Virus record (IMG/VR): IMGVR_UViG_3300050821_013430
Coordinates: 310,001-374,000 of that record
Reading direction: 5' to 3' (one strand)
Length of the DNA: 64,000 bases
This document shows positions 1,493-64,000 of the stretch, in pieces (positions within the stretch are counted from its first letter, which is position 1; every line of letters starts with the position of its first letter). The position numbers and the translations under genes were made by a program. The notes under the pieces were generated by a model. It was not told the DNA's origin, made no database searches, and worked only from the letters and a program-made list of their open reading frames with translations.

Positions 1493-1765
1493 TTACGCAT
1501 TGAACACCAATCCATCGTGGGTATGGATACTGACTACCTGATCATTTGAGTTCAGATACACCAAGTCTCCGGTGTTGTACTTGATGGATGTACGACCAAT
1601 ACCGATGATGGCGGTCTCCTCAGCACCATTGGCATAATGCTTGATGACCAGATCGCTCTCCTTCAACTCATCTTCCTGGTGTCCCTTATGCCACTCACGG
1701 CACTTGGGGACATCGCATTCCAGGAATCCGTCAGCGTGCCAAGTCCAATGAACCGTTGAAACCAT
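1493..1765 (-). CDS. Hypothetical protein (MVSTVHWTW...)
   Basis: AAGGA SD before ATG at 1765. Confidence 0.5.
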   Translation of the reverse strand: MVSTVHWTWHADGFLECDVPKCREWHKGHQEDELKESDLVIKHYANGAEETAIIGIGRTSIKYNTGDLVYLNSNDQVVSIHTHDGLVFNA

Positions 1766-1783
1766 CGTTATTCCTTTGCTTAT

Positions 1784-3065
1784 CACGTCGCAACTTCGCG
1801 ATTTCATTTGGTAATCAGGGCATAATGGTGCATCCACTTAGACCCATGATGACCTTCAAGTACAAACTCTACAAGAGCCATAAGTTTGGCTACTTAGAGG
1901 CACTTTTGCCCATCGCCTGCGATATCTACAACTGGGTGCTTTTGACCAAACGGGAAGCATATTCATGGGATAAGACCAACATCAGCCTTTATGAGATGCA
2001 GAAAATGGTCAAGGACAGGCGGAACGAGTCTAATTCGGCGTGGAAGATGATCGGCTCGCAAGCCGTAGAGCAAATCATCGATCGTATCTACAATGGCTAT
2101 GAGCGTTTCTTTGGCGATCTGAAACGGGGCGTGAAAACTTCTCCTCCTAAGCTCAAAAAGACACCTAAGTATCGGAGCATCACATTTAGACAGGGCAGGG
2201 GCTACAAACTACTCGATAACAACATCATCTACATCAGCGGACAAGGCTGGAAAGGACGAGGAGGCAAAACATTCAGGTTTCACAAACACCGAGATTGGCG
2301 GGGCCAGATCAAAACCCTTACCATCAAGAAAAACAACTTAGGCGAATGGTTCATCTACATCACAACGGACTATGAGGGAAAACTTCCAGAGCCAACCAGA
2401 ACGGGTAAAAGCGTCGGTTTGGACTTCGGGCTCAAAACATTCCTCACCACATCCGATGGTCAGATGATTCAATCTCCTCAGTTCTTCAAGCAAGGCCTTC
2501 GAGAGATCAAGAGACTGTCAAAACTGTTGAACTCGAAGAAGAAAGGCAGCAACAACTGGGAGCGGGCGAGACTAAACCTTGCTCGGGCCCACGAGAGCAT
2601 AACCAACAAGCGGAAAGACTTCCACTGGAAACTAGCAGTCAAACTTTGTCAGCAGTATGAGTTCATCTGCTTAGAGATACTCAACCTCAAAGGAATGAAA
2701 GCTTTATGGGGTCGCAAGGTTTCCGATCTGGGCTTTTACCAGTTCGTTCAGATACTCAAATGGGAGGCCCAGAAACACGGATGTAGGGTGATCCAAATTG
2801 ATCGTTGGTATCCTTCGTCGAAAGAGTGCGGTGCTTGTTGGCACATCAATCAAAGCCTTTCGTTGCGAGATCGAGAGTGGAACTGCGTTGCCTGCAACGC
2901 CCATCACGATCGTGATCTCAATGCTGCTCAGAACATACTTAGAGTGGGGTTAGCCACTCTTGCAGGAGCCGATGTCAGACCTCTCAAACCCTTGCGGAAG
3001 CAGGGCAAGAAGGCATTCGGCGTTGATAACACAAGATCGAAGCGACACAAATCGCTTCGGATCAA
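1784..3065 (+). mobile_element. Non-autonomous IS200/IS605-type element (tnpB only)
   Basis: tnpB antisense to the operon; subterminal hairpin then TCAA (3062-3065); TTAT at 1780-1783 as candidate left junction; no tnpA. Confidence 0.55.
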
Positions 3066-3069
3066 CTAA
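1825..3069 (+). CDS. tnpB: TnpB RNA-guided endonuclease
   Basis: RuvC motifs VGLDFGLK, ICLE, HDRDLNAAQNI; CxxC...CxxC Zn finger; start 1825 or 1846. Confidence 0.93.
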   Translation: MVHPLRPMMTFKYKLYKSHKFGYLEALLPIACDIYNWVLLTKREAYSWDKTNISLYEMQKMVKDRRNESNSAWKMIGSQAVEQIIDRIYNGYERFFGDLKRGVKTSPPKLKKTPKYRSITFRQGRGYKLLDNNIIYISGQGWKGRGGKTFRFHKHRDWRGQIKTLTIKKNNLGEWFIYITTDYEGKLPEPTRTGKSVGLDFGLKTFLTTSDGQMIQSPQFFKQGLREIKRLSKLLNSKKKGSNNWERARLNLARAHESITNKRKDFHWKLAVKLCQQYEFICLEILNLKGMKALWGRKVSDLGFYQFVQILKWEAQKHGCRVIQIDRWYPSSKECGACWHINQSLSLRDREWNCVACNAHHDRDLNAAQNILRVGLATLAGADVRPLKPLRKQGKKAFGVDNTRSKRHKSLRIN

Positions 3070-3085
3070 CACAGCCGATCAGAAG
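2945..3085 (+). ncRNA. Putative omega-RNA of TnpB, overlapping the tnpB 3' end
   Basis: Similar to the 3' end of the second tnpB, with covarying GNRA hairpin; terminal hairpin gatcgaagcga/tcgcttcggatc. Confidence 0.6.
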
Positions 3086-3214
3086 GAACGGCAGGGCTGC
3101 CATCGCAGCGATGAACGCCGTTAGACCAATCGCGTACCAATAGGCCGAGGGGTCTTCGGGGATGCGGACGACTTCGATTCCACGCTTCGCGTCTTGTACC
3201 AGTAGTTTCTTCAT
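3062..3214 (-). CDS. Small membrane protein
   Basis: MKKLLVQD..., C-terminal hydrophobic helix; its stop lies in the IS right end. Confidence 0.5.
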   Translation of the reverse strand: MKKLLVQDAKRGIEVVRIPEDPSAYWYAIGLTAFIAAMAALPFLLIGCVS

Positions 3215-5721: not shown

Positions 5722-6579
5722 CTATTGCCTCAATTGTCGAGTGTGTTTGTAGATGGATTCGATCTGATCGAGAAATTCATCGAGTGTCAGATCACTCTTC
5801 ATCCAGTTGCATATCTTGCAACATGGCACCACATTATCGATGATGTGGCCCTTAGAACTATCGATACGATCGATGCCGTTATAGATGAACGGTTCAGCTT
5901 TTTGGTCGTCGCCCTTCAAATTGAAGGAGTTGCTGGGTGGGCGCCCGCAATAATAGCACTGTTCCTGTGAAAGGCTATAGAAAGAGTCAAAATCAAGGAT
6001 CTCATCTCCGTACCCTCTATCTTTTTCGCGGGATCGATAACCCCTCCACACGATCTTTGCAAGAGCCACGATAGGCGTATACCTTGTCTCAAATCGATGA
6101 GACTTGGGGCTGGTATGTAGCGTCGCGCGATGTTCGGCTGCCATACAACCACAACTCTTATTACGCCCGCCTTTCACATCGGCTGGGGTCGCAAGCGTCT
6201 GATTACCACAATCACATTCAACTTCCCATAGTACACCGTCACGACGTCTTTGTTCTGTTGGTTTGAGAAACTTGAGTCGATGGATTTTGATCTCGGTCAT
6301 ATCCAAATTGGTTCGAGTTTTGCCGGGGAGCGTGGCCGCTTCAGCCGGAGCGCCAGCCTTTTGGTGAATAGGATTGCAACAACGCAAATTACCACAGGTA
6401 GGGAATACATAAGCACCATTAGGAACAGTCCCGTGAACCACCAAATAAATCGCCCTCCTATTATAGGCGTTCGTTTTTCTGCTCACGCTACCTATGTATT
6501 CCCAGCATTCGTTCTCACCACAAATACCTATCCGTTTCCCGAACCGTTCTTTGATCTGTGCCAGTATGTCTTTGTCCAT
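5722..6579 (-). CDS. HNH homing endonuclease
   Basis: CYYCG...GIDRIDSSKGHIIDNVVPCCKICNWMK; CDCG..KSCGC domain; degenerate N-terminal HNH. Confidence 0.85.
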   Translation of the reverse strand: MDKDILAQIKERFGKRIGICGENECWEYIGSVSRKTNAYNRRAIYLVVHGTVPNGAYVFPTCGNLRCCNPIHQKAGAPAEAATLPGKTRTNLDMTEIKIHRLKFLKPTEQRRRDGVLWEVECDCGNQTLATPADVKGGRNKSCGCMAAEHRATLHTSPKSHRFETRYTPIVALAKIVWRGYRSREKDRGYGDEILDFDSFYSLSQEQCYYCGRPPSNSFNLKGDDQKAEPFIYNGIDRIDSSKGHIIDNVVPCCKICNWMKSDLTLDEFLDQIESIYKHTRQLRQ

Positions 6580-32029: not shown

Positions 32030-32707
32030 GACTTGGTTCCTTTCAGGAGAGAGACGAGGTACTTGGCGAGTTTGTAGAGTTGAGCAATCGCTATGATGCC
32101 CAATAGGAAGAACGGGAACAGCAGGATCATCAGGAAGACGTGCATGGCTACACCTCTCCGTCGACGACCACGATGTCAGCCGAAGACTGCTTCTTAGCCT
32201 TCATCGACTGCTGGCGGTTTTGAGTTTTGCGAAGAGACCGAGACATCGAACGCTTGTAATCGGTCTTGCGTTTGCCGCGAGACTTGCGCTGTTGCTTGGT
32301 CAACTTCTTCATGGTGCCTTTCTTCATCAGTGCCTCCGAACAATCAGCACGACTACGATCATCACAACGAACAGGAAGACGCACATGACTTACCGACCCT
32401 TTCTGAGGAGCAAACGGTTGAACCAGTATCTGACGACCAGGAACGAGAACGCGCATCGATAGTAGAGCGTCAGACAGAACATCTGCCATCGACTGAGAGG
32501 GAAACCTGCTACTCTCCCGGCCGTACTGGCGCCGAGATGAAAGACCGCTTTACCCATTGGGATCCTCCTTCGGATCGTTCTTGATCACCTTGACGGAATC
32601 CGTCAGGCGATTGTTGAGGACTTCGACATCCTTCTCGGAGTCGCGACCCTTGATGGGTTGCAGATCAATGGTGCCATCGTCATTGGGAAGGACTTGGTAG
32701 GTGGTAA

Positions 32708-35356: not shown

Positions 35357-35856
35357 TGAGTGATGCTCCTTGTCTGATTGATGGCTGACTTCTTGGTAGC
35401 GCCGGTGGGCCACGATCCCACAAGAGCATTACTGCCCAGCAGTTTTTGAGACTGCCCTGTATTCCAATTCCAGCACGGCGCCATACGCTTCTACTTTCTA
35501 CCGTGTAGTCTCTCCAACGCTTCATGCACCATTCCAATCAACATCCAAACTGGTGCCAGAATGAAAAGGAGTGGCCATGCCAGAGTGGTAAACCCACCTC
35601 GCCAAGTCCAAGACTTGGTTAGCCAATCAAAGGCCAGTATCACTACCGTCCCTGTGATGTACGCTATCAGTATGTATCCCAGCATCATCTCACCAACTTC
35701 CCTTCGTCTCCACCAGATGGTCTCTTACCACCCCATCCTCACACTTCACCAACAACACCAATCCACCAGTCTTCAACGTCCATCCATGACAGATGGAAGA
35801 GATAGGCTCCTTGGCGGGGTCTTTGTTCTTGGCGACTTCGGCCTTGACTTCGCTCA

Positions 35857-37420: not shown

Positions 37421-38341
37421 GACGACACCTTCTTAGGGATGGTGGTTATTGGGACGCTATCTTGGCGAAAGAACGCATGATGGGGTGATTGATGTTGTAG
37501 AAGGAGCAAGCACGCCAGATATCATTGGCATCCAACATGGCTCCGTCCTTGACCTTGCATTCATCGCACCACACCACATGGATGGTTTCGACAAAGAAGC
37601 CATAACAGGGATCGGTGATATCGACCGGCTTCTCGCAATGGTCGCAGAAAGTGGTGGTCATAGGGTACCTCCCAAGGCAAGAATGCGTTCGCGGTAGTAA
37701 GGGATCTTGGTCGTCGCCAGCATCTTCTTACGCTGACGGAAAGAACGAGAGTCGTCGAATTGGAGGGATATGATGCGGCTATGGCAGAAGGACTCTTCCC
37801 AACAGGCAGCGTTGAGTTTTTCTTGCCAGTAAGAAAGGTCTCGCATAACACACTCCGGAAGTTGATTGGACACCTACGTTTAGAGACCGGGTGTCCGGAC
37901 GGTCTTTCCATGGCTGGGATCGTTCTTGGGGAGAGAACGATCAACCAGCCTTGGAGAGGCTACTGAGCCAAAGATGGCTGCGCATTGAGCCAAGACTTTC
38001 TTTGCTCGACGATGATCCGTTTGGCCCCACATCCCGGGCACACGTGCTCGTAGGTGCCTGGCTGCAAGACGATATAGCCGGGAGGGTTATGTTCGGGATG
38101 CAAGCAGGGCTGTTGGTGCCAGGTTCGTTCGTCTGCGATTCGTCTGAGTGTCATTGAGTAGGCTCCATAATTCGGTTCTTCATCAGAGCGAGGACAGGCC
38201 ATGCCAGCCACCAGAAGAAACTGACGATGATCAGTTTCCATTCAGGAGCGGCTCGGTTAGGGAAGAGGACTCGCCACAAGAGGTAGGTAATGGCGGTTCC
38301 GGTAAGTTCGATACCACCAGCGATGAGTAGGATGTTCGTGT

Positions 38342-38611: not shown

Positions 38612-38814
38612 AGGTGAAGCCTTCCGCATTGAGGGCAACAGATCTTCTTGAACTCAGCGTGGGCACTACCATCCTTGTAGATGGCAATGGAGGTTGACCG
38701 ATCATTAGGCCAACGATACCTACAGCAATCACCGCAAAGGAAGATGATGCCGGAGACTGAGCCATTCTTACGATCAGGTAGTGGCTTGTTGCAGTAATGG
38801 CAATAGGGGATCAT
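38608..38814 (-). CDS. CxQCxxxH-tail protein, family B
   Basis: MIPYCHYC...CGDC...CPQCGRLHL*. Confidence 0.75.
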   Translation of the reverse strand: MIPYCHYCNKPLPDRKNGSVSGIIFLCGDCCRYRWPNDRSTSIAIYKDGSAHAEFKKICCPQCGRLHL

Positions 38815-39023
38815 GGGTGTCTCTTGCCACACTGAGGGCAAAGTAAGGGTTTGAGGTCGTTGGGCACATCATAGAATGGATAGCCACCAGTACCTGTACC
38901 AGTACTGAAACAGTGCTTACTACCATAGGCAATGACAATACACTCCGTGCAATACCAAGAGTAGTTTGCTTTCGGGCATAAGGGAAGCGGTTTGTCGCAA
39001 GCAGCGCATACAACGTCCATCAC
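38811..39023 (-). CDS. CxQCxxxH-tail protein, family B
   Basis: VCAAC...CTEC...CPQCGKRHP*. Confidence 0.75.
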   Translation of the reverse strand: MMDVVCAACDKPLPLCPKANYSWYCTECIVIAYGSKHCFSTGTGTGGYPFYDVPNDLKPLLCPQCGKRHP

Positions 39024-39374: not shown

Positions 39375-39677
39375 TCAACTCCACTTGAGTCGTTCTTGTT
39401 CGACCAATACTCGACGTTCTTGTTCCTTCTCGTACTCTTCGTCTCTGAGTTCGATATGGGCAATGATCTGGTCAGCGGCCATGGAAGAGTAGTCAGGCTG
39501 CTTCTTGTTCGGCTCCACGCACGATTCTACCTCCCCCACATAACGCAAATCGTCCCAGAGACTGTTGGCGGTCTTCTCTTTGGTGACTTCGGTGATCTGC
39601 ACTCGTTCGCCCTTGTCATTGAGGTAAACGGCAAAACCGAATCGATCCGCAGCGTACTTGGAATACCAACCATGCAT
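39375..39677 (-). CDS. Hypothetical protein
   Basis: VQITEV...WDDLRYVGEV. Confidence 0.5.
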   Translation of the reverse strand: MHGWYSKYAADRFGFAVYLNDKGERVQITEVTKEKTANSLWDDLRYVGEVESCVEPNKKQPDYSSMAADQIIAHIELRDEEYEKEQERRVLVEQERLKWS

Positions 39678-39683
39678 GACTAC

Positions 39684-40025
39684 TTACCTCGCTTTACCGC
39701 AATTCAATGAGCCACACTGCGGACATGGATTAGCCATCGGCACATATGGACGAACGCATGCACAATCGGGATTGTATGCGTGCGCCTCGACAATTCCCCA
39801 CTTCTCCCACTCAGGGAGGATCTTCCTCGAAGAGGAGTTTGTGGGAGGCTTCTCTCCGGACTTCCACCCTAAGATGGTTTCACCGGGAGCATTGGATAGC
39901 ACCATGGCAGGGATGCTCCGAGTGGTCGGAGCGATATTAGCGTACCCCTTCTCTTGTAGGTACATCTCAATAGTCTCGCCAACTTCGCAATCACGAAACC
40001 TGGGCACGACGACCTCCACAATCAA
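39684..40025 (-). CDS. Variant-tail protein (CPQCx4C), family A-like
   Basis: LGWKSGE...CPQCGSLNCGKAR*. Confidence 0.65.
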   Translation of the reverse strand: MIVEVVVPRFRDCEVGETIEMYLQEKGYANIAPTTRSIPAMVLSNAPGETILGWKSGEKPPTNSSSRKILPEWEKWGIVEAHAYNPDCACVRPYVPMANPCPQCGSLNCGKAR

Positions 40026-40320
40026 CGCGATGGCATTGAGGACAATGCTCCATCAATCGGAGTATCTTGGTTTGTCGGGCTGAGTAGTACCACCCAATCG
40101 GCTGGGATGGATCGAAACCAAACTCCCTTGCCTTGTCTTCCAATCCGGAGAGTTGGTGGAGATTGGACTTGGCCTCAGTCTCTGTGTTGTAGTAGGGGGT
40201 GTCGAGGGCAAACTTACGAGTGCCACCATCAATACTGCCAATCAGCGTCGCCAATCTCTTCTCTCGTCCCTCAATCTCGATTTCCACCACGTCGCCAACT
40301 TTCAGTTCCGTTATCTCCAT
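39991..40320 (-). CDS. Variant-tail protein (CPQCx4C), family A-like
   Basis: ELKVGDVVEI...ATLIG...CPQCHRVDCGG. Confidence 0.7.
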   Translation of the reverse strand: MEITELKVGDVVEIEIEGREKRLATLIGSIDGGTRKFALDTPYYNTETEAKSNLHQLSGLEDKAREFGFDPSQPIGWYYSARQTKILRLMEHCPQCHRVDCGGRRAQVS

Positions 40321-40334
40321 GGCTCGTCTCCTAA

Positions 40335-40750
40335 GTTAGGGAGCCCCGTTAGCAGCGCTGCCTTGTACCTTTGTCCTTCTCACCACGGGGCGACGATGAG
40401 AAGTGAGACCGATATGGGGTGGCTATTCTCGGTCTATCCTGTTCGTGTGCCACCATACGGAGCCCACCTTTTGGGATGGGCGTCATTAGAGGTCATCAGG
40501 CGTGGCAGCTATTCCACGGTCTCCTGCGGGAGCAACTCATTACCCAACCAGGCAAGTCAGATGCCGCAGCACGTTGCCTGAGAGTTGAATAGCAAGTCCC
40601 TGATGACCAGAGGGAATGGCAAGGTTCGCATCTTGCTTTCATCGAACAGGTGATCCACCACGAGCCTGTCCGACTATCTTCCTCGCGAAAGGAGAGCGAG
40701 GCATTCCCAACACCATCGGTTTAGACTCCAAGATGGCCTAAGGAGTTTGA
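40335..40750 (-). ncRNA. Candidate structured ncRNA or leader (about 400 nt); strand inferred
   Basis: No credible ORF; many nested perfect stems and a pseudoknot. Confidence 0.55.
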
Positions 40751-40951
40751 GGAGGATGTTCCCTGGCTTAGAGGGTATCTACATCGTCCTCGTTTCATCG
40801 GTCGCCTCCGTGGGCGCCGATAACTCGTGAGCATGGCACTTCTTGCCGAACTTGGCATGCCACCAGAGATGCCATCGTCGGAAGTAGTATCCAACGAAGG
40901 GGATGGCAGACATCAGAGCATAGGCTTCATCTTGACAGAAGTGCATCGAAA

Positions 40952-41314
40952 CTACCGCTTGCTGAGATAGGTTCCCAGTGCGCGAAGAGCCTTTCTCGTA
41001 GGCTGCACCACGTACTGATCACCCAACACCGCGGCCACGGCGAGAAACTCCTTGCCAGTTTCGGCGAGAGGCTTTTCGGTAGAAGGAGTGGTGGTCGTTT
41101 CCAGAGCCTTGAACTCGGGAACATATTCCACCTTGATGCTGACCCCATCGACCAGGGTGGGGAATCCGGTAGGAACCGAATCCACCCCATTGAAAACGAC
41201 GCGGAGAGCATTATTGCCATCCGTGTCCTTGGTCAATCCCACGGTCAATTCGGGATAGGTCTTGAGCAGCGTTTCCTTGGCAGCCTGGGCTGCCTCTTTG
41301 GTAATCTTCGTCAT
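40952..41314 (-). CDS. Stand-alone homolog of the Nal1-like protease prodomain
   Basis: TVGLTKDTDGNNALRV...VDGVSIKVEYVPEFKAL resembles SVGITRKGKENILAL...VGGECEFKVIPEMCAF. Confidence 0.6.
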   Translation of the reverse strand: MTKITKEAAQAAKETLLKTYPELTVGLTKDTDGNNALRVVFNGVDSVPTGFPTLVDGVSIKVEYVPEFKALETTTTPSTEKPLAETGKEFLAVAAVLGDQYVVQPTRKALRALGTYLSKR

Positions 41315-41419
41315 TGGTTGAGTCTTTCTTGGGTTAGGGTGAATTTACTGAGAGGTGAGGATATAGAATGTGGTAGGGGTGATTTGGGCAGTAGTAAAAC
41401 ACGAGTAATTGAGGATGAG

Positions 41420-42409
41420 ATGACGAAGAGCAGGGGCATTAGGAAGCCGTTTACAGAAGAGGAACAGAACGCAATCTGCGTAGAATACAGTGGTGGCGCG
41501 CTTATGGGCAGTCTAACAGAGAAATACAGGCGTTCTGCGAATACGATTAGGAAGTGTCTTGTAGCACACGGTGTTCAGAGTATTGATCATCACGTTGGTC
41601 CATCCAAGTACATCTATAACACGCAAGTCTTCACCAACGAAGATGACATCAGCTACTACCTGCTCGGAGTATTCATGACCGATGGATGTGTTCGGTTAGA
41701 CGTTCAGAAACGGAAGGGCAAAGAGTACCCCTACTATCGCGTCTCTTTGACCAGTAAAGATGGGGATTGGATGGAAACCATCACCGATCTCATTTGTACG
41801 GGGAGAAAACCAACCGAACGCAAAACTCGCAACTGCTACGAAGTAGAGTTCAACTCCGGTGAGATAGCACAATGGTTGATGAGTAAGGGATGTTTGCCCC
41901 GGAAATCTCTTACTTTGCAGTTCCCAGATGTTCCGCCTCAATATCTACCTGACTTCTTGCGTGGTGTAATCGATGGTGATGGTATGGTTTCAATGACTAA
42001 ACCAGGACGCATAATGACAATGCGTTGCGCCGTATTCACGGGAAGTCTTGATTTCGCTAATGGTATTGAAACAGCGATCAGAACACTTGGTGTTGAAAGC
42101 AAGATACTCGTCCGCAAGATGCAACCCAGACTCATTGGAGATCGAATGGTTCTCTCTGAGAGAGATAACTATGCGGTGCGTCTGAAAAACGGTGAGAACG
42201 CCTGCAAGCTCCTAAAACTCGCCTATTACTCAGGACATCGGCTTGCCTTAGCGCGTAAGGCAAAGACAGCCCAAGAGCTGATCGCATATTGGGAACGAGA
42301 GTTCCGATGCGTTGATTGCGATCAGCTCTTGGTCATTGGCAAGAGATCGCGTTGCACGAAATACTGCGACGGATGTCGCATCACACGCACAACGACCAGG
42401 ATTCAGTAA
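41420..42409 (+). CDS. LAGLIDADG homing endonuclease with N-terminal HTH
   Basis: YLLGVFMTDGCV and DFLRGVIDGDG; GAGG SD before ATG 41420. Confidence 0.88.
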   Translation: MTKSRGIRKPFTEEEQNAICVEYSGGALMGSLTEKYRRSANTIRKCLVAHGVQSIDHHVGPSKYIYNTQVFTNEDDISYYLLGVFMTDGCVRLDVQKRKGKEYPYYRVSLTSKDGDWMETITDLICTGRKPTERKTRNCYEVEFNSGEIAQWLMSKGCLPRKSLTLQFPDVPPQYLPDFLRGVIDGDGMVSMTKPGRIMTMRCAVFTGSLDFANGIETAIRTLGVESKILVRKMQPRLIGDRMVLSERDNYAVRLKNGENACKLLKLAYYSGHRLALARKAKTAQELIAYWEREFRCVDCDQLLVIGKRSRCTKYCDGCRITRTTTRIQ

Positions 42410-42412
42410 GCC

Positions 42413-43351
42413 TTATCCTATGATCTCTACGCCAAGAGTCTTGACTACGGCGTCCATGTAATTCAGAAGCGTAATCTGGCCCCCGCCCGCATATAACAAC
42501 CCAAATGGCCGATTACTGCCATTCATCACACAACAACTTCCCGAGTCGCCTCCGGAACTATACAGACCGCCGATGCCCGTCACTTCGATCTGATCCTTGA
42601 ATCCAAGGACTCCGCGTCGTCCGTAATTGACTCGCACATTGTCCAGCTCAATAGCGGTAATGTGGCCCAGAGTCTTTCCGGTGGTACGACCGAACTTGGC
42701 CACTTCCTGGCCCGGCTCGATCTCGTCATGGTGCATGACTCGCTTGTCCAACTTGCCCAAACCATGGACAGTGGAAGGATCGTACTTGACTCCATCCACC
42801 AATGTCGCCACTGCGGCGTCGACGACGTTTCCACGGCTCTGCAACTTGACCCACTTGGTCAGCTTGGCCACCGTATCGGACTCCTTGCCACCGTCATGCT
42901 TGCCGGGCTGATAGATAGCATCTCCCTCCTTGGCATAGTCGCAATTGGCGAGCACGTGATTGTTGCTGAGAACGAAAACGGTCTTGCCCTTCTGAGCAAA
43001 GCATCCGGTTGTTCCTGCCGTGATCTCGTAGTGCCCGATGCTGGCACCGATTCGGAGCGGACGATTCTTGCGCTGTCTCCAATCGGGGAGATCATCCGGA
43101 TTGCCGAATGCACACATCTCCGGAATCACCTTGAACTCGCATTCACCACCGACCAACTTGTGCACCAAGCCAGCCACCATTCCGAACGCACTCGCCTTGT
43201 CCGCTCTCAGGGCCAGGATGTTCTCCTTACCCTTGCGCGTGATTCCGACCGAGACGCTTCCGAAACCCATCGGGTTGGTGGTCATTGCCACCATCGAAGC
43301 CACCTGAGACAACACCTTGGATTTGCATTCGCGAACTGATTCCATCTTCAT
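42413..43351 (-). CDS. Trypsin-like (S1, Nal1-like) serine protease with prodomain
   Basis: LSNNHV (His), VDAAVA (Asp), GGDSGS (Ser), GRTTG. Confidence 0.88.
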   Translation of the reverse strand: MKMESVRECKSKVLSQVASMVAMTTNPMGFGSVSVGITRKGKENILALRADKASAFGMVAGLVHKLVGGECEFKVIPEMCAFGNPDDLPDWRQRKNRPLRIGASIGHYEITAGTTGCFAQKGKTVFVLSNNHVLANCDYAKEGDAIYQPGKHDGGKESDTVAKLTKWVKLQSRGNVVDAAVATLVDGVKYDPSTVHGLGKLDKRVMHHDEIEPGQEVAKFGRTTGKTLGHITAIELDNVRVNYGRRGVLGFKDQIEVTGIGGLYSSGGDSGSCCVMNGSNRPFGLLYAGGGQITLLNYMDAVVKTLGVEIIG

Positions 43352-43402
43352 GATCGTTCCTCTTTCCTTGTTAGGCCGCACTAAGGCAGCACTTGTTGCG
43401 TT

Positions 43403-43711: not shown

Positions 43712-43971
43712 GGGTGTTGTTCTCCGCATTGGGGGCACACCTTGCTTTTGAGACGGGCTCGGACTGTCTCGATGCCTGAATTGCGTCTTGCGCAAAGACC
43801 CTCACCACCCATCGATTGCCAGTGTTCCCGCCGATACTCCTCGATTTCAAGGCCCATCTCATTGAACACCAACTCAGCGCAAGATGGGCATGCCAGGGTA
43901 TAACCACTGCCTGGCAGCCCATACTCACACTCAATCAGTTTGCCGCAGACTGCACACGGGCGCGGGCTCAT
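43708..43971 (-). CDS. CxQCxxxH-tail protein, family B
   Basis: CAVCG...CPSC...CPQCGEQHP*; coupled to Clp stop. Confidence 0.75.
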   Translation of the reverse strand: MSPRPCAVCGKLIECEYGLPGSGYTLACPSCAELVFNEMGLEIEEYRREHWQSMGGEGLCARRNSGIETVRARLKSKVCPQCGEQHP

Positions 43972-46187
43972 GTCAGTACCAGTTTCCCATCCACCACATC
44001 CACCAATACCGTCCTGCCATTCTCGAAACGACCAGCCACGATCAATTCGGAGATGGGGTCTTGGATGTTCTTCATGATGGAACGCTTCAACGGGCGGGCG
44101 CCGAAACGCGGCTCGTAGCTGATATCCACCAACATCTGCTTGGCTTCGGGAGTCAGGTTGACCTTGGTCTTCCTGTTCTCCAACACCTTCTCCAAGTTGC
44201 GTAGTTGGATATCCACGATGCCCGTCAGATTCTCCTTGGTCAGCGGCTGGAAGACCACGATGTCATCAATACGATTGATGAACTCCGGTCGAAGGTGCTT
44301 CTTCACCTCTCCCAACAGGGTCTCCTTCAATTCCGCCACTCCTTCCGCCGAAGCGAAAGTCTCTGGGCGTTCTTTGGCCACATCCAAGATCAGCGGAGTG
44401 CCGATGTTGGAGGTCATGATTACCACGGTGTTGGAGAAGTCCGCAGTCTTACCACGACCATCGGTGAGTCGCCCATCATCCAGAACTTGGAGCAGGAGAT
44501 TGAACACGTCCGGGTGCGCCTTCTCCACCTCGTCGAAGAGGAGAACGGAGTATGGACGCTTCTTGACCGCCTCGGTAAGGTGGCCACCGGCCTCCGAATC
44601 GGCATAACCAGGAGGCGCACCAATCAACCGTTGAGCCATATGACGCTCCTGAAACTCCGACATGTCGAATCGAGTGAGAGCCTTCTCATCATCGAAGAGG
44701 AACTCAGCGAGTGCTTTGGCCACTTCCGTCTTTCCGACACCGGAACTTCCCAGGAAGAGGAAGGATCCAATCGGTCGGGTGCCCTCTCTCAATCCAACGC
44801 GAGACCGACGCACCGACCTCGATACGGCTCCGATGGCTTCGTTCTGTCCAACCACCCTCTTGCCGAGAGTGCCTTCCATCTTGGACAACTTCTCGTTCTC
44901 CGCTTCCATCATCTTGGATGCAGGGATGCCAGTCCAATCCGAGAGAACGGATGCCACGTCGTTATCCTCCACCAATTCGGCGGATCGGATCCGACACTTA
45001 GAACCCGCTTCGTCAATCAGGGAGAGGGCGGATTCCGGCAGGAACTTGTCCTGCACGTATCGCTTGGCCAGTTTGACTGCTGTTCCTGCCGCAGCCTCAT
45101 CGATCCTCAGACTATGGAAGATCTCGTATCGAGGGTAAAGAGCCTTGACGATCTCGGTGGCGAAGTCGAGAGAAGGCTCCTCGATGTTGAGCACGGTAAA
45201 GTGCTTCAACAGATTGGTATCCTTCTCCTGCACCTTCTTGTAAGAGCCCGGAGTGGAAGAGGCAAAGAATCGCGTCTTGCCGTTCATCAGGATGGGTTTC
45301 AGACAATCAGAGAGGTTGCCAATGGCTGCTCCCTGATTGACCACCGCTTCGATTCCGTCTATGAACAGGATGACATCGTTCTTCAACAGAGCGACAACTT
45401 GCTTGATCCTCTCATCAACTTCGCCTCTGGCCTTGACGCCTGCGAAGAGTTCGTTCATCTCCAATTGCAGAATGGAGACGTGTTTCAGATTGGGCGGGAC
45501 GTTGCCGGAGTTGATCGCCTTGGCCAGAGCCATGACGATGGTGGTCTTGCCCACGCCATACTCACCCACCAGGATAGGGTGGTTCTTGGAATGACGACCC
45601 AAGATTTGGATCAGCCGCTTCAACTCCTTCTCTCGACCTACCAATGGATCGGTATCCGTCTTGGCCAGAAGAGACAAGTCCTTGGTGTACTTGCCTACTC
45701 GGGAAGCCTGCTCGCGCTTACCCTGTAAGAACTCGTTGAATGGATCGAAGGCTCCCTTGTTGAGCGAGAAGGTCTTCAACAAGGTATTGGCCGCACCATT
45801 GACTTCGGCTGAAACCAGAGAGAGGAGATCCTCGATCTGAATCGGATTGCCATCCTTCCGCTTCTCGATCTTGGAGAAGAGGGAGAGGAGACGACCGGGC
45901 CAATAGGCGTGCTCGTTTTGCGTCTTGGGAAGAAGAGTGAGCGAGCTCTTGATGGCTGCTTCGCATACCAGCAGATCAATGCCGAGCCTCTCCAAGATCT
46001 CCTTGACCACATCCATCTCGAAGAGACAGGCGAAGATATGGATCGGGTCGACGACTTCGTGGCGATTCTTGTCCGCCAGTTTCTCCGCCTTGACCATGAT
46101 CTCTCGTGCTTCTCGCGCGAAAGTCTTCAAGTCAAGCGACTTGACCTTCTCAGTCGCAGTGCCGTTCTGGGTAGCGTTGTTCTCCAT
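43968..46187 (-). CDS. ClpA/ClpB-family AAA+ ATPase, atypical
   Basis: Clp N-domain; GEYGVGKT; GSSGVGKTE; LLFDEVEKAHPDVF; FRPE-like and GARPL motifs. Confidence 0.92.
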   Translation of the reverse strand: MENNATQNGTATEKVKSLDLKTFAREAREIMVKAEKLADKNRHEVVDPIHIFACLFEMDVVKEILERLGIDLLVCEAAIKSSLTLLPKTQNEHAYWPGRLLSLFSKIEKRKDGNPIQIEDLLSLVSAEVNGAANTLLKTFSLNKGAFDPFNEFLQGKREQASRVGKYTKDLSLLAKTDTDPLVGREKELKRLIQILGRHSKNHPILVGEYGVGKTTIVMALAKAINSGNVPPNLKHVSILQLEMNELFAGVKARGEVDERIKQVVALLKNDVILFIDGIEAVVNQGAAIGNLSDCLKPILMNGKTRFFASSTPGSYKKVQEKDTNLLKHFTVLNIEEPSLDFATEIVKALYPRYEIFHSLRIDEAAAGTAVKLAKRYVQDKFLPESALSLIDEAGSKCRIRSAELVEDNDVASVLSDWTGIPASKMMEAENEKLSKMEGTLGKRVVGQNEAIGAVSRSVRRSRVGLREGTRPIGSFLFLGSSGVGKTEVAKALAEFLFDDEKALTRFDMSEFQERHMAQRLIGAPPGYADSEAGGHLTEAVKKRPYSVLLFDEVEKAHPDVFNLLLQVLDDGRLTDGRGKTADFSNTVVIMTSNIGTPLILDVAKERPETFASAEGVAELKETLLGEVKKHLRPEFINRIDDIVVFQPLTKENLTGIVDIQLRNLEKVLENRKTKVNLTPEAKQMLVDISYEPRFGARPLKRSIMKNIQDPISELIVAGRFENGRTVLVDVVDGKLVLT

Positions 46188-50343: not shown

Positions 50344-50585
50344 GGGTGCAACTCTCCACATTGATGGCAAGTGGGGTTTTGCGTGAAGACGTTGCCTGGG
50401 CTGCCATCCGTAAGGACTTCCCTGATCACCGGATGACGATCATTGCTGATCGAAGCCATAAGTCTCGCTGCCTCAACATAGGTCAGTCGGTTTGGGTTTT
50501 CAGGATCGTTGCCACCAGCGATAGTCCAACGAGAGACTGAGGTATCGTTCTTCTTCGGGGTTTGCAACCAGACATTGAATCGCAT
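50340..50585 (-). CDS. CxQCxxxH-tail protein, family C
   Basis: MRFNVW...RWT...REVLTDGSPG...CHQCGELHP*. Confidence 0.8.
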   Translation of the reverse strand: MRFNVWLQTPKKNDTSVSRWTIAGGNDPENPNRLTYVEAARLMASISNDRHPVIREVLTDGSPGNVFTQNPTCHQCGELHP

Positions 50586-50614
50586 GTGTATCTCCTAAGA
50601 TGGGAAAGGGATTC

Positions 50615-50691
50615 CAGAGAGACCAACGGACTAATTGAGAGCGTGTCGCGGGGGAGCGGAGACACACCCTCATACACCGTCAGTCTCTCTG
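50615..50691 (-). ncRNA. Stem-closed structured element upstream of family C gene
   Basis: cagagagac/gtctctctg closing stem with inner acgg/ccgt and gtgtc/gacac stems. Confidence 0.4.
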
Positions 50692-50846
50692 AAAACTGGG
50701 GTCAGCCTGCATAGGTCGTGAGATCGCTACACGTCTCTTGCAGGTCGATCATATCGGCCTCTCGTTCCGTTGAGCCTATCTCAGTACGGGCCTCGATCAT
50801 CTCCTTGACCCGACGAATGGCATCGGTGATGATCTTGATCTCCTGC

Positions 50847-55161: not shown

Positions 55162-56202
55162 ATGAGAAAACGAAGCGTGGAAGAACGATTCTGGGAAAAG
55201 GTGCTGAAAACTGAGGAGGGGTGCTGGCTATGGACTGCCGGTAAGTTTCCGTCAGGGTATGGGGCCTTCGCCATATCACACCGAAAAACGGTGAAAGCGT
55301 CCCGTTATTCCTACGAACTACATCACGGCCCATTCCAAAAAGACCTCTTCGTTCTCCATACTTGCGATCAGCCTTCTTGCGTCAACCCATCCCATTTGTT
55401 CTTGGGTACTCATCAAGACAACATGGATGACCGTACCGCTAAGGACAGGAACCACAAGAATCGTCCTAATCCACCACCGATACTAATCACCCTACCAACT
55501 CGTAGGCCAACTCTCGAAGAGAACTTTTGGAGTATGGTAGAAAAGACAGATGGTTGCTGGGTTTGGAAGGGTCAGGTCAGACATGAAAGTGGAAAGGTAA
55601 GAGGGTGTTTCTACATCGGGAGAGAGGTTGGGGTACTTCCTCAACGGTTCTCATATGAACTACATGCCGGAATTACCGTTGATCCGAACAAGGATCAAAT
55701 CATCCAATCGTGCGGCGAACGACTATGCGTCAATCCAGATCACTTGTCTCTTCGTAAGCGCTACATGGACAAGGACGAAAGGTTTTGGTCTAAGGTGGAT
55801 AAGACAGGAGAGTGTTGGGTATGGACTGGCTACAAGCCAGAAGGCTATGGCCGCTTCTCGTATTGCGAAAACGCAGTAAGAACAAACATACCGGCTCATC
55901 GATATTCTTGGGAACTACACAGCGGCAAAATACCGGAAGGTATGTTCGTTTGTCATCAGTGCGATAATCCACCATGCATCAGACCTGAACACCTTTTCTT
56001 AGGTAGCAACATCGACAACATAGTCGACAGCATCGAGAAGAAGAGGCACAGTTTCGCGAAACTCACTATTGACCAGGTGAAACTAATACGCTCACCTGAA
56101 TTAGCAACTCATAGCAGCCAGGAACTCGCAACCATGTTTGGTGTTTCTTCATACACCATTAGCAAGGTTCTGGATAGAACAACTTGGGCTCATCTACCAT
56201 GA
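55162..56202 (+). CDS. Homing endonuclease with three HNH repeats
   Basis: Three FW.(K/M)V.K...CW.W units; second lacks the conserved His; HTH tail. Confidence 0.9.
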   Translation: MRKRSVEERFWEKVLKTEEGCWLWTAGKFPSGYGAFAISHRKTVKASRYSYELHHGPFQKDLFVLHTCDQPSCVNPSHLFLGTHQDNMDDRTAKDRNHKNRPNPPPILITLPTRRPTLEENFWSMVEKTDGCWVWKGQVRHESGKVRGCFYIGREVGVLPQRFSYELHAGITVDPNKDQIIQSCGERLCVNPDHLSLRKRYMDKDERFWSKVDKTGECWVWTGYKPEGYGRFSYCENAVRTNIPAHRYSWELHSGKIPEGMFVCHQCDNPPCIRPEHLFLGSNIDNIVDSIEKKRHSFAKLTIDQVKLIRSPELATHSSQELATMFGVSSYTISKVLDRTTWAHLP

Positions 56203-57900: not shown

Positions 57901-58669
57901 TCTCCTCTTACACCTCACGAGGCCAAGAAGAAGAACCGAGAGGCAGGAAGACCGAACACGGTCTGAGGATAGCATACTGCAAACACAATGCTACCTTCGC
58001 ACCCTTACCCATCAAGCGCTCATCAGAGCAGTGGGTTCTGCCAGAACTTGTTTAGGCGGACTTTTTGCCCATCTGAATGTATCGGATGAGGAAGGTTGCG
58101 ACCAGAAAGAATCCGGCCAGAAACACTATCATCGGATAGGTTGGCGTGAGATGGAACAACCTAACTATGAGGTAGGAACTCAACGCACCGCCGAAAAAAC
58201 CGGAAGTCGTTTCTTGGAAGGCGGAGAGAAACGCAGTCTTGAATCGAGAAGTGTTCATGTGATGTCCTTTCGTGTCTAAGTGTCCGACGCCTTGGAATTG
58301 AACCAAGCTCGAAGATCCGGGGTTATAAGCCTCGCGGCACTACCTTGTGCCTTGCGTCGGTAAGTCTATCTCTTCATCAACAGCATCGCCCCAAGCACCA
58401 CCGCTGCCAATCCAACCGGCACTACCAGATACCTTACCCACCAACGCGTCCTCGGAAAGACGACATGGTTGAGAACCGGCGCTACAAAGAACATGATCGC
58501 GAACACGACGATGCTTTGCTTATCCATTAGTCCATTCTCCCACGCGTCTTATACAGCCTCACCACACTCTTCCCAATCAGCAGCAACCATGTTGTCGAAC
58601 CGCTGATCCATTCGATCTTCCGAATCCCCAACCACTCGAAACCGAAAGTCTGTATGGTAAGATGTGGGC

Positions 58670-63264: not shown

Positions 63265-63395
63265 GTGATATACTCTCCGAATGGTTTTAGCCGTTCGAGA
63301 TTGTGCCATCAACGCTGAGAGCCTGCTTGCCACGCTTGCGCGTGGGCTTCGCAGGTCTTACCTCAACTCCGACAAGGGTTGATATCCCAACCCCG
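63265..63395 (-). ncRNA. Putative omega-RNA / right end of second TnpB element
   Basis: Similar to 2945-3066; terminal hairpin then TCAC. Confidence 0.55.
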
Positions 63396-64000
63396 TTCTT
63401 GCTTTTCAGCAAGGACATACCTTGTGTATGAATGTTGATCGCGGCATTCGCATCACGATCGTGATGCGTGCCGCAGTTTGAGCAATCCCATTCTCGATCT
63501 TTTAGGTCGAGAGTCTCATTGATATGCTGGCAGCAAGAACAAGTCTTGCTGCTCGGATAGAAACGATCAATGAAGATCACCTTTGAGCCATACTTGCTGG
63601 CCATATAGACCAGTTTCTGAACGAAGGAGTAGAGGCCTAAGTCTCCAATCTTGCGACTACATAAGGCTTGCATCCCTTTCAGGTTGAGGGTCTCTAAGCA
63701 AATTGTCTCGTAGGTTTGCACCAATTGGTAAGCCAACTGCCAGTGAAAGTCTTTTCGTTGGTTGGCGATGTCGTCATGAGCCTTGGCAAGCGCACGAAGT
63801 GCGCGCTTGCTATTCCCACTACCCTTGACCTTACTATCTAACTGCTGATTGAGTCTCCTGATCTTCTTGCTGCTTTGCTTGAAGAACAAGGGAGATTGGA
63901 TCGCTGTACCATCACTTCCTGTCAGGAAGTTTTTGAGCCCGAAGTCGAAACCGACGCTTTTACCCGATCTGGTTTCTTGTTTGGACGCTTCCTGAAAGTC
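63287..64000 (-). CDS. tnpB: TnpB RNA-guided endonuclease (5' part outside window)
   Basis: In frame to window edge: VGFDFGLKNF, ICLE, HDRDANAAINI, Zn finger. Confidence 0.93.
   Translation of the reverse strand, partial: DFQEASKQETRSGKSVGFDFGLKNFLTGSDGTAIQSPLFFKQSSKKIRRLNQQLDSKVKGSGNSKRALRALAKAHDDIANQRKDFHWQLAYQLVQTYETICLETLNLKGMQALCSRKIGDLGLYSFVQKLVYMASKYGSKVIFIDRFYPSSKTCSCCQHINETLDLKDREWDCSNCGTHHDRDANAAINIHTQGMSLLKSKNGVGISTLVGVEVRPAKPTRKRGKQALSVDGTISNG

What the first reader, a model, noticed from the sequence alone, without database searches (positions are those of the whole stretch)
40335..40750. About 400-nt densely folded non-coding region with a pseudoknot next to a start codon
Seen in sequence: domain 1 is closed by ggtcatcagg/cctgatgacc (40491-40608) and contains caactc/gagttg, aggcaa/ttgcct and cgtgg/ccacg. 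Domain 2 is closed by gggaatg/cattccc (40612-40708) with three hairpins. An H-type pseudoknot (cttctca/tgagaag crossed by gccccgt/acggggc, 40343-40403) ends about 20 nt before the ATG at 40320. I see no tmRNA, RNase P, SRP or group I signature. Inference: a novel large phage ncRNA or regulatory leader.
Basis: partly seen in the sequence, partly recalled or inferred. Interest (0 to 1): 0.62.

Follow-up and report, generated by a model that had tools for sequence, protein, structure and literature searches.

The report
Non-coding leader in a soil megaphage
The stretch is a real 460-630 nt gap without genes in a 472-kb soil phage, and the described helices are there, but it folds only modestly better than the rest of this genome, matches no known RNA family and cannot be traced in any relative, so a new structured RNA is possible but unproven.

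Summary
It is the gap 40321-40951 between two minus-strand genes, p120 and p109; 458 nt remain if a 55-codon ORF is real. The window lies in a 472,749-bp IMG/VR soil virus record.

Rfam 15 and ARAGORN find nothing. On the minus (sense) strand the two multi-helix domains fold well (z -3.9 and -3.0). However, local structures with z below -3 occur 1.5-1.8 times per kb per strand in this genome, and 108 multibranched ones with z below -3.3 lie in 200 kb, many far stronger. The gap ranks in the top 2-9% of windows on the minus strand and has no such structure on the plus strand. The pseudoknot geometry is rarer: 17 cases in 472 kb.

No covariation test is possible. One copy is identical. An 89%-identical relative loses homology exactly at the p120 stop. 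A 433-kb relative lacks the whole locus.

My best reading is a lineage-specific non-coding spacer or 5' leader of p109 in a hypervariable locus that also holds a homing endonuclease. A functional leader or a free-standing ncRNA remains a minority possibility.

The parts
40321..40778 (-). Non-coding stretch, the core of the finding. It extends to 40951 if orf55 is not a gene.
   Evidence: No ORF with coding signal and stops of all kinds in all frames. JGI gene calls leave 40321-40951 empty. No Pfam or PHROG match in any frame.
40612..40708 (-). Domain 2: 7-bp closing helix and three hairpins (cloverleaf-like outline).
   Evidence: Minus strand: dG -38.6, z -3.0, MFE is 55% of the ensemble. Plus strand: -35.9, z -2.7. 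RNALfold z -3.4.
40491..40608 (-). Domain 1: perfect 10-bp closing helix, one long arm and two short hairpins.
   Evidence: Inverted repeat I1. Minus strand: dG -51.6, z -3.9. Plus strand: -44.0, z -2.9.
40343..40403 (-). Candidate H-type pseudoknot. Hairpin CUUCUCA(40403-40397)/UGAGAAG(40383-40377); its loop GCCCCGU(40391-40385) can pair with ACGGGGC(40349-40343). Loops of 5, 1 and 27 nt.
   Evidence: Sequence. The hairpin is in the MFE. The geometry is rare genome-wide: 17 in 472 kb, and this is the only one in the window. The pseudoknot itself is not predicted by any tool used and competes with a 3' hairpin.
40328..40332 (-). Shine-Dalgarno AGGAG of p109, 7 nt before the ATG at 40320 and 10 nt after the last pseudoknot arm.
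   Evidence: Sequence.
40741..40745 (-). CUCCU that pairs with the Shine-Dalgarno sequence in the whole-region MFE and centroid. A local GUCUC at 40408-40412 does the same in a 100-nt fold.
   Evidence: A given 5-mer is expected about 0.4 times in 450 nt by chance, so this is not significant.
39991..40320 (-). p109, the gene downstream of the stretch: small beta-barrel-like N-terminal part and a C-terminal CPQC...C zinc-ribbon motif.
   Evidence: Its only relatives are repeated modules inside very large proteins (best E 9e-9).
40779..40946 (-). orf55, a possible small gene with a hydrophobic segment. It starts 5 nt after the p120 stop and has no clear SD.
   Evidence: Coding score per codon is similar to the neighbours. 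It has no family match and is absent after p120 in relative L082.
40952..41314 (-). p120, the gene upstream of the stretch. It is complete.
   Evidence: The 120-aa product is 99% identical in L082. A soil metatranscriptome contig lies on it.
41420..42409 (+). LAGLIDADG homing endonuclease gene. The insert spans about 41346-42422.
   Evidence: Pfam LAGLIDADG_3 1.9e-9 and phrog_4645 2.8e-27. Absent from relative L082 and from the X4 contig.

Best explanation
The stretch is a lineage-specific non-coding spacer in a hypervariable accessory locus of an uncultivated 472-kb soil phage. It most likely travels on the minus-strand message as the long 5' untranslated leader of p109, and as the trailer of p120/orf55.

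Its RNA folds into two compact multi-helix domains, plus a hairpin that could form a pseudoknot just upstream of the p109 ribosome-binding site. At most this would modulate mRNA stability or access to the ribosome-binding site. The amount of structure lies in the upper tail of what this genome shows everywhere. Nothing shows a discrete, conserved ncRNA gene.

Shown: it is non-coding; the helices exist; folding is better on the minus strand; it matches no known family; the neighbourhood varies between relatives.

Inferred: co-transcription with p109, and any regulatory effect.
For: - Non-coding.
- All flanking conserved genes read on the minus strand, and p109 has its own AGGAG and ATG.
- No sigma-70-like promoter and no convincing intrinsic terminator in 39500-41800.
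- No repeated regulatory word in the gap.
- Structure is strand-specific: 54-65% of the stretch is covered by z<-3 local structures on the minus strand and 0% on the plus strand, which puts it in the top 2-9% of windows.
- The background is high: 1.5-1.8 such structures per kb per strand; 108 multibranched structures with z<-3.3 in 200 kb, reaching z -7.5; 150-nt windows in the gap are ordinary.
- The locus varies between relatives. The homing endonuclease next door is present here but absent in L082 and X4. In L082 (ClpB 89%, p120 96% nt identity) homology stops at window 40948, the p120 stop, and an unrelated convergent ORF follows.
- The 433-kb relative G001 (terminase 63% identical) has no protease, p120, p109 or domain 1/2 match.
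- No Rfam family.
Against: - A gap of 460-630 nt is long for a phage.
- Four consecutive z<-3 structures on the sense strand and none on the other strand is what selection on RNA structure would also produce.
- Domain 2 is unusually well defined: its MFE is 55% of the ensemble.
- A two-stem H-type pseudoknot with perfect 7-bp stems is expected only about 0.01 times in a stretch of this size, yet one sits 10 nt from the ribosome-binding site.
- Absence from relatives says little, because those relatives also lack the flanking genes, or their contig ends 121 nt past p120.
Confidence: 0.5

Rival explanations
1. It is a functional cis-acting leader. The pseudoknot and/or long-range pairing of CUCCU (40741-40745) or GUCUC (40408-40412) with the Shine-Dalgarno sequence controls translation of p109. 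p109 itself may bind the pseudoknot, in the manner of the T4 gene 32 autogenous operator.
For: - A rare pseudoknot geometry lies 10 nt upstream of the SD.
- The SD is paired in the MFE and centroid of both the whole region and the 100-nt leader.
- Structure is enriched on the sense strand.
- p109 has a small barrel plus a zinc-ribbon motif, which is compatible with nucleic-acid binding but no more than that.
- In T4, gp32 represses its own mRNA through a 5' pseudoknot (PMC535899, PMC3014915).
Against: - The immediate 100-nt leader has an ordinary nested fold (z -0.9).
- The pseudoknot competes with a 3' hairpin.
- Five-base anti-SD words are expected by chance.
- There is no long unstructured A/U-rich tract between the pseudoknot and the start, unlike gene 32.
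- No conservation data exist, and the function of p109 is unknown.
- 400 nt is far more than such an operator needs.
Confidence: 0.2
2. It is a free-standing, novel large structured ncRNA of the phage: two cloverleaf-like domains plus a pseudoknot, with a function of its own, in the sense of the large ornate bacterial and phage RNAs.
For: - Non-coding stretch with two adjacent, well-defined multi-helix domains on the sense strand.
- Four z<-3 structures in a row.
- No known family.
Against: - No second copy in the genome.
- No match with single-sequence covariance models in the phage's terminase relatives or in 1.4 Mb of ClpB loci.
- No promoter or terminator found.
- No RNA contig over it.
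- z-scores are ordinary for this genome.
- The nearest relative diverges at its upstream border.
Confidence: 0.1
3. It is a relic: a decayed gene, intron or mobile-element remnant, or a recombination scar left by traffic of homing endonucleases. The folding is incidental.
For: - A LAGLIDADG gene that comes and goes lies 400 nt away.
- The window holds several other endonuclease and transposase genes.
- Homology with L082 breaks exactly at the gap's border.
- Tandem paralogues with a CPQC motif lie just downstream.
Against: - No frame of the gap matches Pfam or PHROGs.
- There is no convincing similarity to p109, p113 or p70: the best is z 3.1 in one of 18 tests, and that alignment contains a gap and a stop.
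- No group I or group II match.
- No terminal repeats and no other copies.
Confidence: 0.15
4. It acts as DNA, for example as a replication origin, a packaging site or a protein-binding site built on the 10-bp inverted repeat.
For: A perfect 10-bp inverted repeat with arms 98 nt apart.
Against: - No iterons and no AT-rich tract.
- No repeated words.
- No change in GC skew here.
- Folding is clearly better on one strand, which points to RNA rather than DNA.
Confidence: 0.05

Closest known systems
T4 gene 32 autogenous translational operator (5' pseudoknot plus downstream binding tract)
   Same: An H-type pseudoknot lies in the 5' leader of a phage gene, a few tens of nucleotides upstream of the start codon. 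The regulated gene encodes a small protein with a zinc motif (PMC535899, PMC3014915).
   Different: There is no long unstructured A/U-rich tract between the pseudoknot and the start. p109 is not a gp32 homologue. The stretch is about 400 nt longer than such an operator. No binding or conservation is shown.
Large ornate bacterial and phage ncRNAs (GOLLD, ROOL, raiA, OLE, HEARO)
   Same: Several hundred nucleotides, multi-domain, non-coding, and in a phage genome that also carries tRNA genes.
   Different: No covariance-model match to any of them. It is a single occurrence with no relatives, whereas those classes were defined by wide conservation and covariation (my own knowledge of that literature).
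Group I intron with a LAGLIDADG endonuclease
   Same: A folded non-coding RNA-like stretch lies near a LAGLIDADG gene.
   Different: The stretch interrupts no gene. p120 ends at the same stop in an endonuclease-free relative, and p109 has its own SD and ATG. The endonuclease is on the other strand, 670 nt away, and behaves as a free-standing intergenic insert. There is no Rfam intron match.
tRNA-like elements and tmRNA
   Same: Domain 2 has a 7-bp closing helix, three arms, a 4-nt link before the last arm, and a 5-bp last arm that abuts the closing helix.
   Different: ARAGORN finds nothing at default settings. Only at 85% or 70% thresholds does it give mutually inconsistent calls, such as a permuted tmRNA on the plus strand with an atypical tag. 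There are no Rfam tRNA or tmRNA matches. The first arm starts without the usual 2-nt link, and the last loop has 8 nt and no T-loop sequence.

Membership tests
Any Rfam 15 family (incl. tmRNA, RNase P, SRP, 6S, GOLLD, ROOL, raiA, OLE, HEARO, riboswitches, ribozymes) | Covariance-model score at or above the family's gathering threshold | tested here: not met
   0 matches in the whole window at gathering. In 40100-41000 at E<=10 there were only two noise hits, 15-18 bits against thresholds of 35 and 100.
Group I intron | Match to the group I intron covariance models | tested here: not met
   No hit even at E<=10.
Group I intron | Interrupts a host gene whose exons join into one reading frame | tested here: not met
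   The p120 product is 120 aa and 99% identical in relative L082. p109 starts with its own AGGAG-N7-ATG.
Group I intron | P3-P7 pseudoknot with a guanosine-binding site in P7 | not tested
   No tool here models it apart from the Rfam models, which gave no hit.
tmRNA / tRNA-like | tRNA-like domain recognised by ARAGORN, with a plausible tag reading frame | tested here: not met
   None at default thresholds. At relaxed thresholds the calls are inconsistent, lie on both strands and give an atypical tag.
Pseudoknot translational operator (T4 gene 32 type) | H-type pseudoknot in the leader, close to the ribosome-binding site | tested here: inconclusive
   Two perfect 7-bp crossing helices with sterically feasible loops lie 10 nt from the SD, and the geometry is rare by genome-wide count. 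Formation is not shown, and the pseudoknot competes with a 3' hairpin.
Pseudoknot translational operator (T4 gene 32 type) | Unstructured tract between the pseudoknot and the start for cooperative binding of the repressor | tested here: not met
   Only 10 nt (UCCCUAACUU) separate the pseudoknot from the SD.
Pseudoknot translational operator (T4 gene 32 type) | The downstream gene product binds its own leader | not testable with these tools
   p109 has no informative family: Pfam and PHROGs gave none, the Atlas model has pLDDT 0.52, and its remote relatives are repeats in giant proteins.
Conserved structured ncRNA (general criterion) | Homologues with compensatory base changes in the helices | not testable with these tools
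   No homologue was found. The only other full copy is 100% identical. L082 ends 121 nt past p120 and is unrelated there. The covariance models R1 and R2 hit only themselves.
Conserved structured ncRNA (general criterion) | Thermodynamic stability beyond the genome's own background | tested here: inconclusive
   Top 2-9% of windows on the minus strand. The individual domains are ordinary and the sliding windows are ordinary.

The most novel reading that the evidence does not exclude
A lineage-specific structured RNA of about 400 nt in a 472-kb soil megaphage: two cloverleaf-like multi-helix domains followed by an H-type pseudoknot that abuts the ribosome-binding site of a zinc-ribbon protein gene. 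It would belong to no described RNA family and would act as a large translational control element or as an ncRNA in its own right.
Probability: 0.12. Interest if true: 0.55.

Novelty: new member of a known kind. Interest (0 to 1): 0.25.

Why it matters
If the fold were real and functional, it would be a large structured RNA element from an uncultivated megaphage with no described family. That would add to the short list of big phage RNAs and give a handle on gene control in such phages.

As it stands, the value of the result is calibration. In this genome, stretches that look densely folded to the eye are common, so hand-found helices need a genome-wide background and homologues before they count.

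Tried and rejected
- **Another genetic code:** rejected. The gap's frames carry TAA, TAG and TGA alike.
- **Hidden or decayed protein gene:** no Pfam or PHROG match for ten stop-to-stop frames. Smith-Waterman of p109, p113 and p70 against six frames gave one marginal score (z 3.1). Its alignment has low identity and includes a gap and a stop.
- **Repeat or MITE:** no other copy in the 472-kb genome by blastn or nhmmer. Only short chance repeats.
- **Group I or II intron, tmRNA, tRNA-like:** no Rfam or default ARAGORN support. Relaxed ARAGORN calls were judged false.
- **Homologue hunt:**
  - Phage database blastn: none.
  - IMG/VR with p109, p120 and the protease: none.
  - 80 ClpB loci at about 35% identity: neither the region nor its neighbours.
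  - 5.8-billion-protein search: p109 found only itself; p120 found one 99% relative on a 5.6-kb contig; p100 relatives had no useful contigs.
  - JGI metagenome scan with p109: one identical copy and one motif-only hit.
  - Terminase relatives searched whole with covariance models and proteins: nothing.
- **Reads:** contigs from four runs show near-identical strains only, with no RNA contig over the gap. The single difference listed away from contig ends, 40752 G>A, carries no weight.
- **Repeated promoter-like word in the gap:** none. No sigma-70 promoter or good terminator.
- **My own Markov gene caller:** it left about 30% of the genome uncalled, so it could not show how unusual a 631-nt gap is.
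- **Function of p109:** Atlas and representative searches gave nothing informative.

Full report
**Setting**

The window is bases 310,001-374,000 of a 472,749-bp IMG/VR virus record, rated complete, about 51% G+C. Near-identical sequence occurs in several soil metagenomes. Most genes read on the minus strand. The plus-strand genes I checked are mobile: a TnpB-like transposase, an HNH endonuclease and a LAGLIDADG endonuclease.

Gene order around the finding, read along the minus strand:
- ClpB-like ATPase, 43968-46187
- serine-protease-like gene, 42413-43381
- LAGLIDADG endonuclease on the opposite strand, 41420-42409
- p120, 40952-41314
- a 631-nt gap, 40321-40951
- p109, 39991-40320, preceded by AGGAG-N7-ATG

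**Observation**

The 10-bp perfect inverted repeat was recovered independently.

MFE folds reproduce both closing helices, the three hairpins of domain 2, and aggcaa/ttgcct. cgtgg/ccacg appears in the minus-strand fold only. caactc/gagttg is in neither MFE.

The crossing helices allow an H-type pseudoknot with loops of 5, 1 and 27 nt. Its last arm ends 10 nt before the Shine-Dalgarno sequence.

The stretch is non-coding. TAA, TAG and TGA stops lie in all frames. JGI's gene caller left it empty. No frame matches Pfam or PHROGs. A 55-codon ORF (40779-40946) right after p120 has a coding score like its neighbours.

**Is the folding more than chance?**

- The whole region gives z -2.2 on the minus strand and -1.6 on the plus strand.
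- Cut at their closing helices, domain 1 gives -51.6 kcal/mol (z -3.9) and domain 2 gives -38.6 kcal/mol (z -3.0, MFE 55% of the ensemble) on the minus strand. Both are weaker on the plus strand. These borders were chosen after the fact.
- 150-nt windows tiled over 15 kb have mean z -0.4 and sd 1.2. Those inside the gap run from about -2 to +1.5.
- An RNALfold -z scan of 200 kb of the same genome finds non-overlapping local structures of 60 nt or more with z<-3 at 1.5-1.8 per kb per strand. It also finds 108 multibranched structures with z<-3.3, reaching z -7.5. Taken singly, the two domains are ordinary for this genome.
- The gap does hold four consecutive z<-3 structures on the minus strand. 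Its coverage by such structures is in the top 1.9% (631 nt) to 8.7% (416 nt) of windows on that strand. Coverage is zero on the plus strand.
- The pseudoknot geometry with two perfect 7-bp stems occurs 10 times on the minus and 7 times on the plus strand in 472 kb. This is the only one in the 64-kb window.

Together this is a modest, strand-specific enrichment. It is not more than a reader picking the most folded-looking spot in 64 kb would be expected to find.

**Known families**

Rfam 15 gave no match at gathering thresholds in the whole window, and only two noise hits at E<=10 in 40100-41000. ARAGORN finds only tRNA-Leu(CAA) and tRNA-Ile(UAU) elsewhere in the window. At relaxed thresholds it produces mutually inconsistent calls in the gap, which I discount.

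The stretch interrupts no gene. The p120 product is 120 aa and 99% identical in a relative that lacks the endonuclease, and p109 has its own start signals. An intron is therefore excluded.

**Relatives**

- No second copy exists in the genome.
- A 52.9-kb metagenome contig is 100% identical over 10.3 kb.
- Contig L082 carries ClpB (89% nt identity), the protease (79%) and p120 (96%).
  - It lacks the LAGLIDADG gene. The same break is seen in run X4 at 41341.
  - It loses all similarity at window 40948, the p120 stop codon. Its remaining 121 nt are unrelated and carry a convergent ORF.
- The closest near-complete relative by terminase (63% identity, 432,844 bp) has none of the protease, p120 or p109. 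It also gave no match to single-sequence covariance models of either domain.
- The models also found nothing in 1.4 Mb of ClpB-linked loci.

Covariation therefore cannot be tested. What little comparison exists shows that the gap's upstream border is a breakpoint in a variable locus.

**Expression**

Only assembled contigs were available. One soil metatranscriptome contig lies on p120 (41037-41287), and none lies on the gap. This is far too sparse to count as absence.

**Interpretation**

I take the stretch to be a lineage-specific non-coding spacer, carried on the minus-strand message as the 5' leader of p109 (confidence 0.5). Its structure is in the upper tail of the genome's background. Co-transcription is inferred from gene orientation and from the lack of recognisable promoters, terminators or repeated words.

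In the MFE the Shine-Dalgarno sequence is paired, either with CUCCU at 40741-40745 or locally with GUCUC at 40408-40412. Such 5-mers are expected by chance.

The main rival is a real translational control element. The pseudoknot next to the ribosome-binding site recalls the T4 gene 32 operator (PMC535899, PMC3014915). However, the spacer tract is missing, p109 is unrelated to gp32, and nothing shows binding.

The other rivals are a free-standing novel ncRNA, a decayed gene or mobile-element relic, and a DNA-level site. Each has less support.

**Verdict**

If real, it would be a new member of a known kind, a structured phage leader, rather than a new class. Interest is low to moderate.

Noticed in passing
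window 41346-42422 (gene 41420-42409, +): The LAGLIDADG homing endonuclease gene is a presence/absence polymorphism. It sits between the protease gene and p120 here. In relative L082 the two genes are 34 nt apart, and the contig from run X4 diverges at 41341.
   Followed up: partly
window 1756-3069 (+) and 3018-3121 (+): A TnpB-like transposase gene (phrog_506, E 7e-91). A very stable local RNA structure lies at its 3' end and just beyond (z -5.1, 0 of 200 shuffles), where a guide (omega) RNA would be expected. There is no Rfam match.
   Followed up: partly
window 37880-38020 (both strands): The most stable local fold in the 15 kb scanned: z -5.3 on the minus strand, multibranched. It lies at the junction of two small minus-strand ORFs (37561-37944 and 37960-38241) and is stronger than anything in the reported stretch.
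   Followed up: partly
genome 396697-396817(-), 379330-379453(-), 409983-410089(-) (outside the window); window 63362-63483(+), 50581-50710(-), 32554-32672(+): Multibranched local structures with RNALfold z from -5 to -7.5. On thermodynamic grounds they are better ncRNA candidates than the reported one. I did not examine them.
   Followed up: no
window 38811-39023, 39684-40025, 39991-40320 (all -): Three neighbouring small ORFs end in the same CPQC(G/H)...C zinc-ribbon-like motif, a tandem family of small proteins. p109's body resembles a module repeated 3-5 times in giant proteins of 560-3226 aa (best E 9e-9).
   Followed up: partly
window 40772-42409 (+): The endonuclease's reading frame stays open for 545 codons. 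It runs antisense through all of p120 without a stop or a canonical start before 41318. I take this as chance or a by-product of codon bias.
   Followed up: no
window 41037-41287: A 255-nt contig from a soil metatranscriptome run (X3) matches p120 with 8 mismatches and a 1-nt gap. A close relative's p120 is therefore probably transcribed in soil, although DNA carry-over is not excluded.
   Followed up: no
window 35394-35482 (-), 58282-58360 (-): Phage-borne tRNA-Leu(CAA) and tRNA-Ile(UAU).
   Followed up: no
window 55162-56202 (+), 5722-6579 (-): Further HNH / endonuclease VII-type homing endonuclease genes. The window is rich in selfish elements.
   Followed up: no
L082:5480-5614 (-): In the 89% relative, a convergent ORF of unknown kind overlaps the end of p120, where this phage has orf55 and the gap. 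The contig ends inside it.
   Followed up: partly
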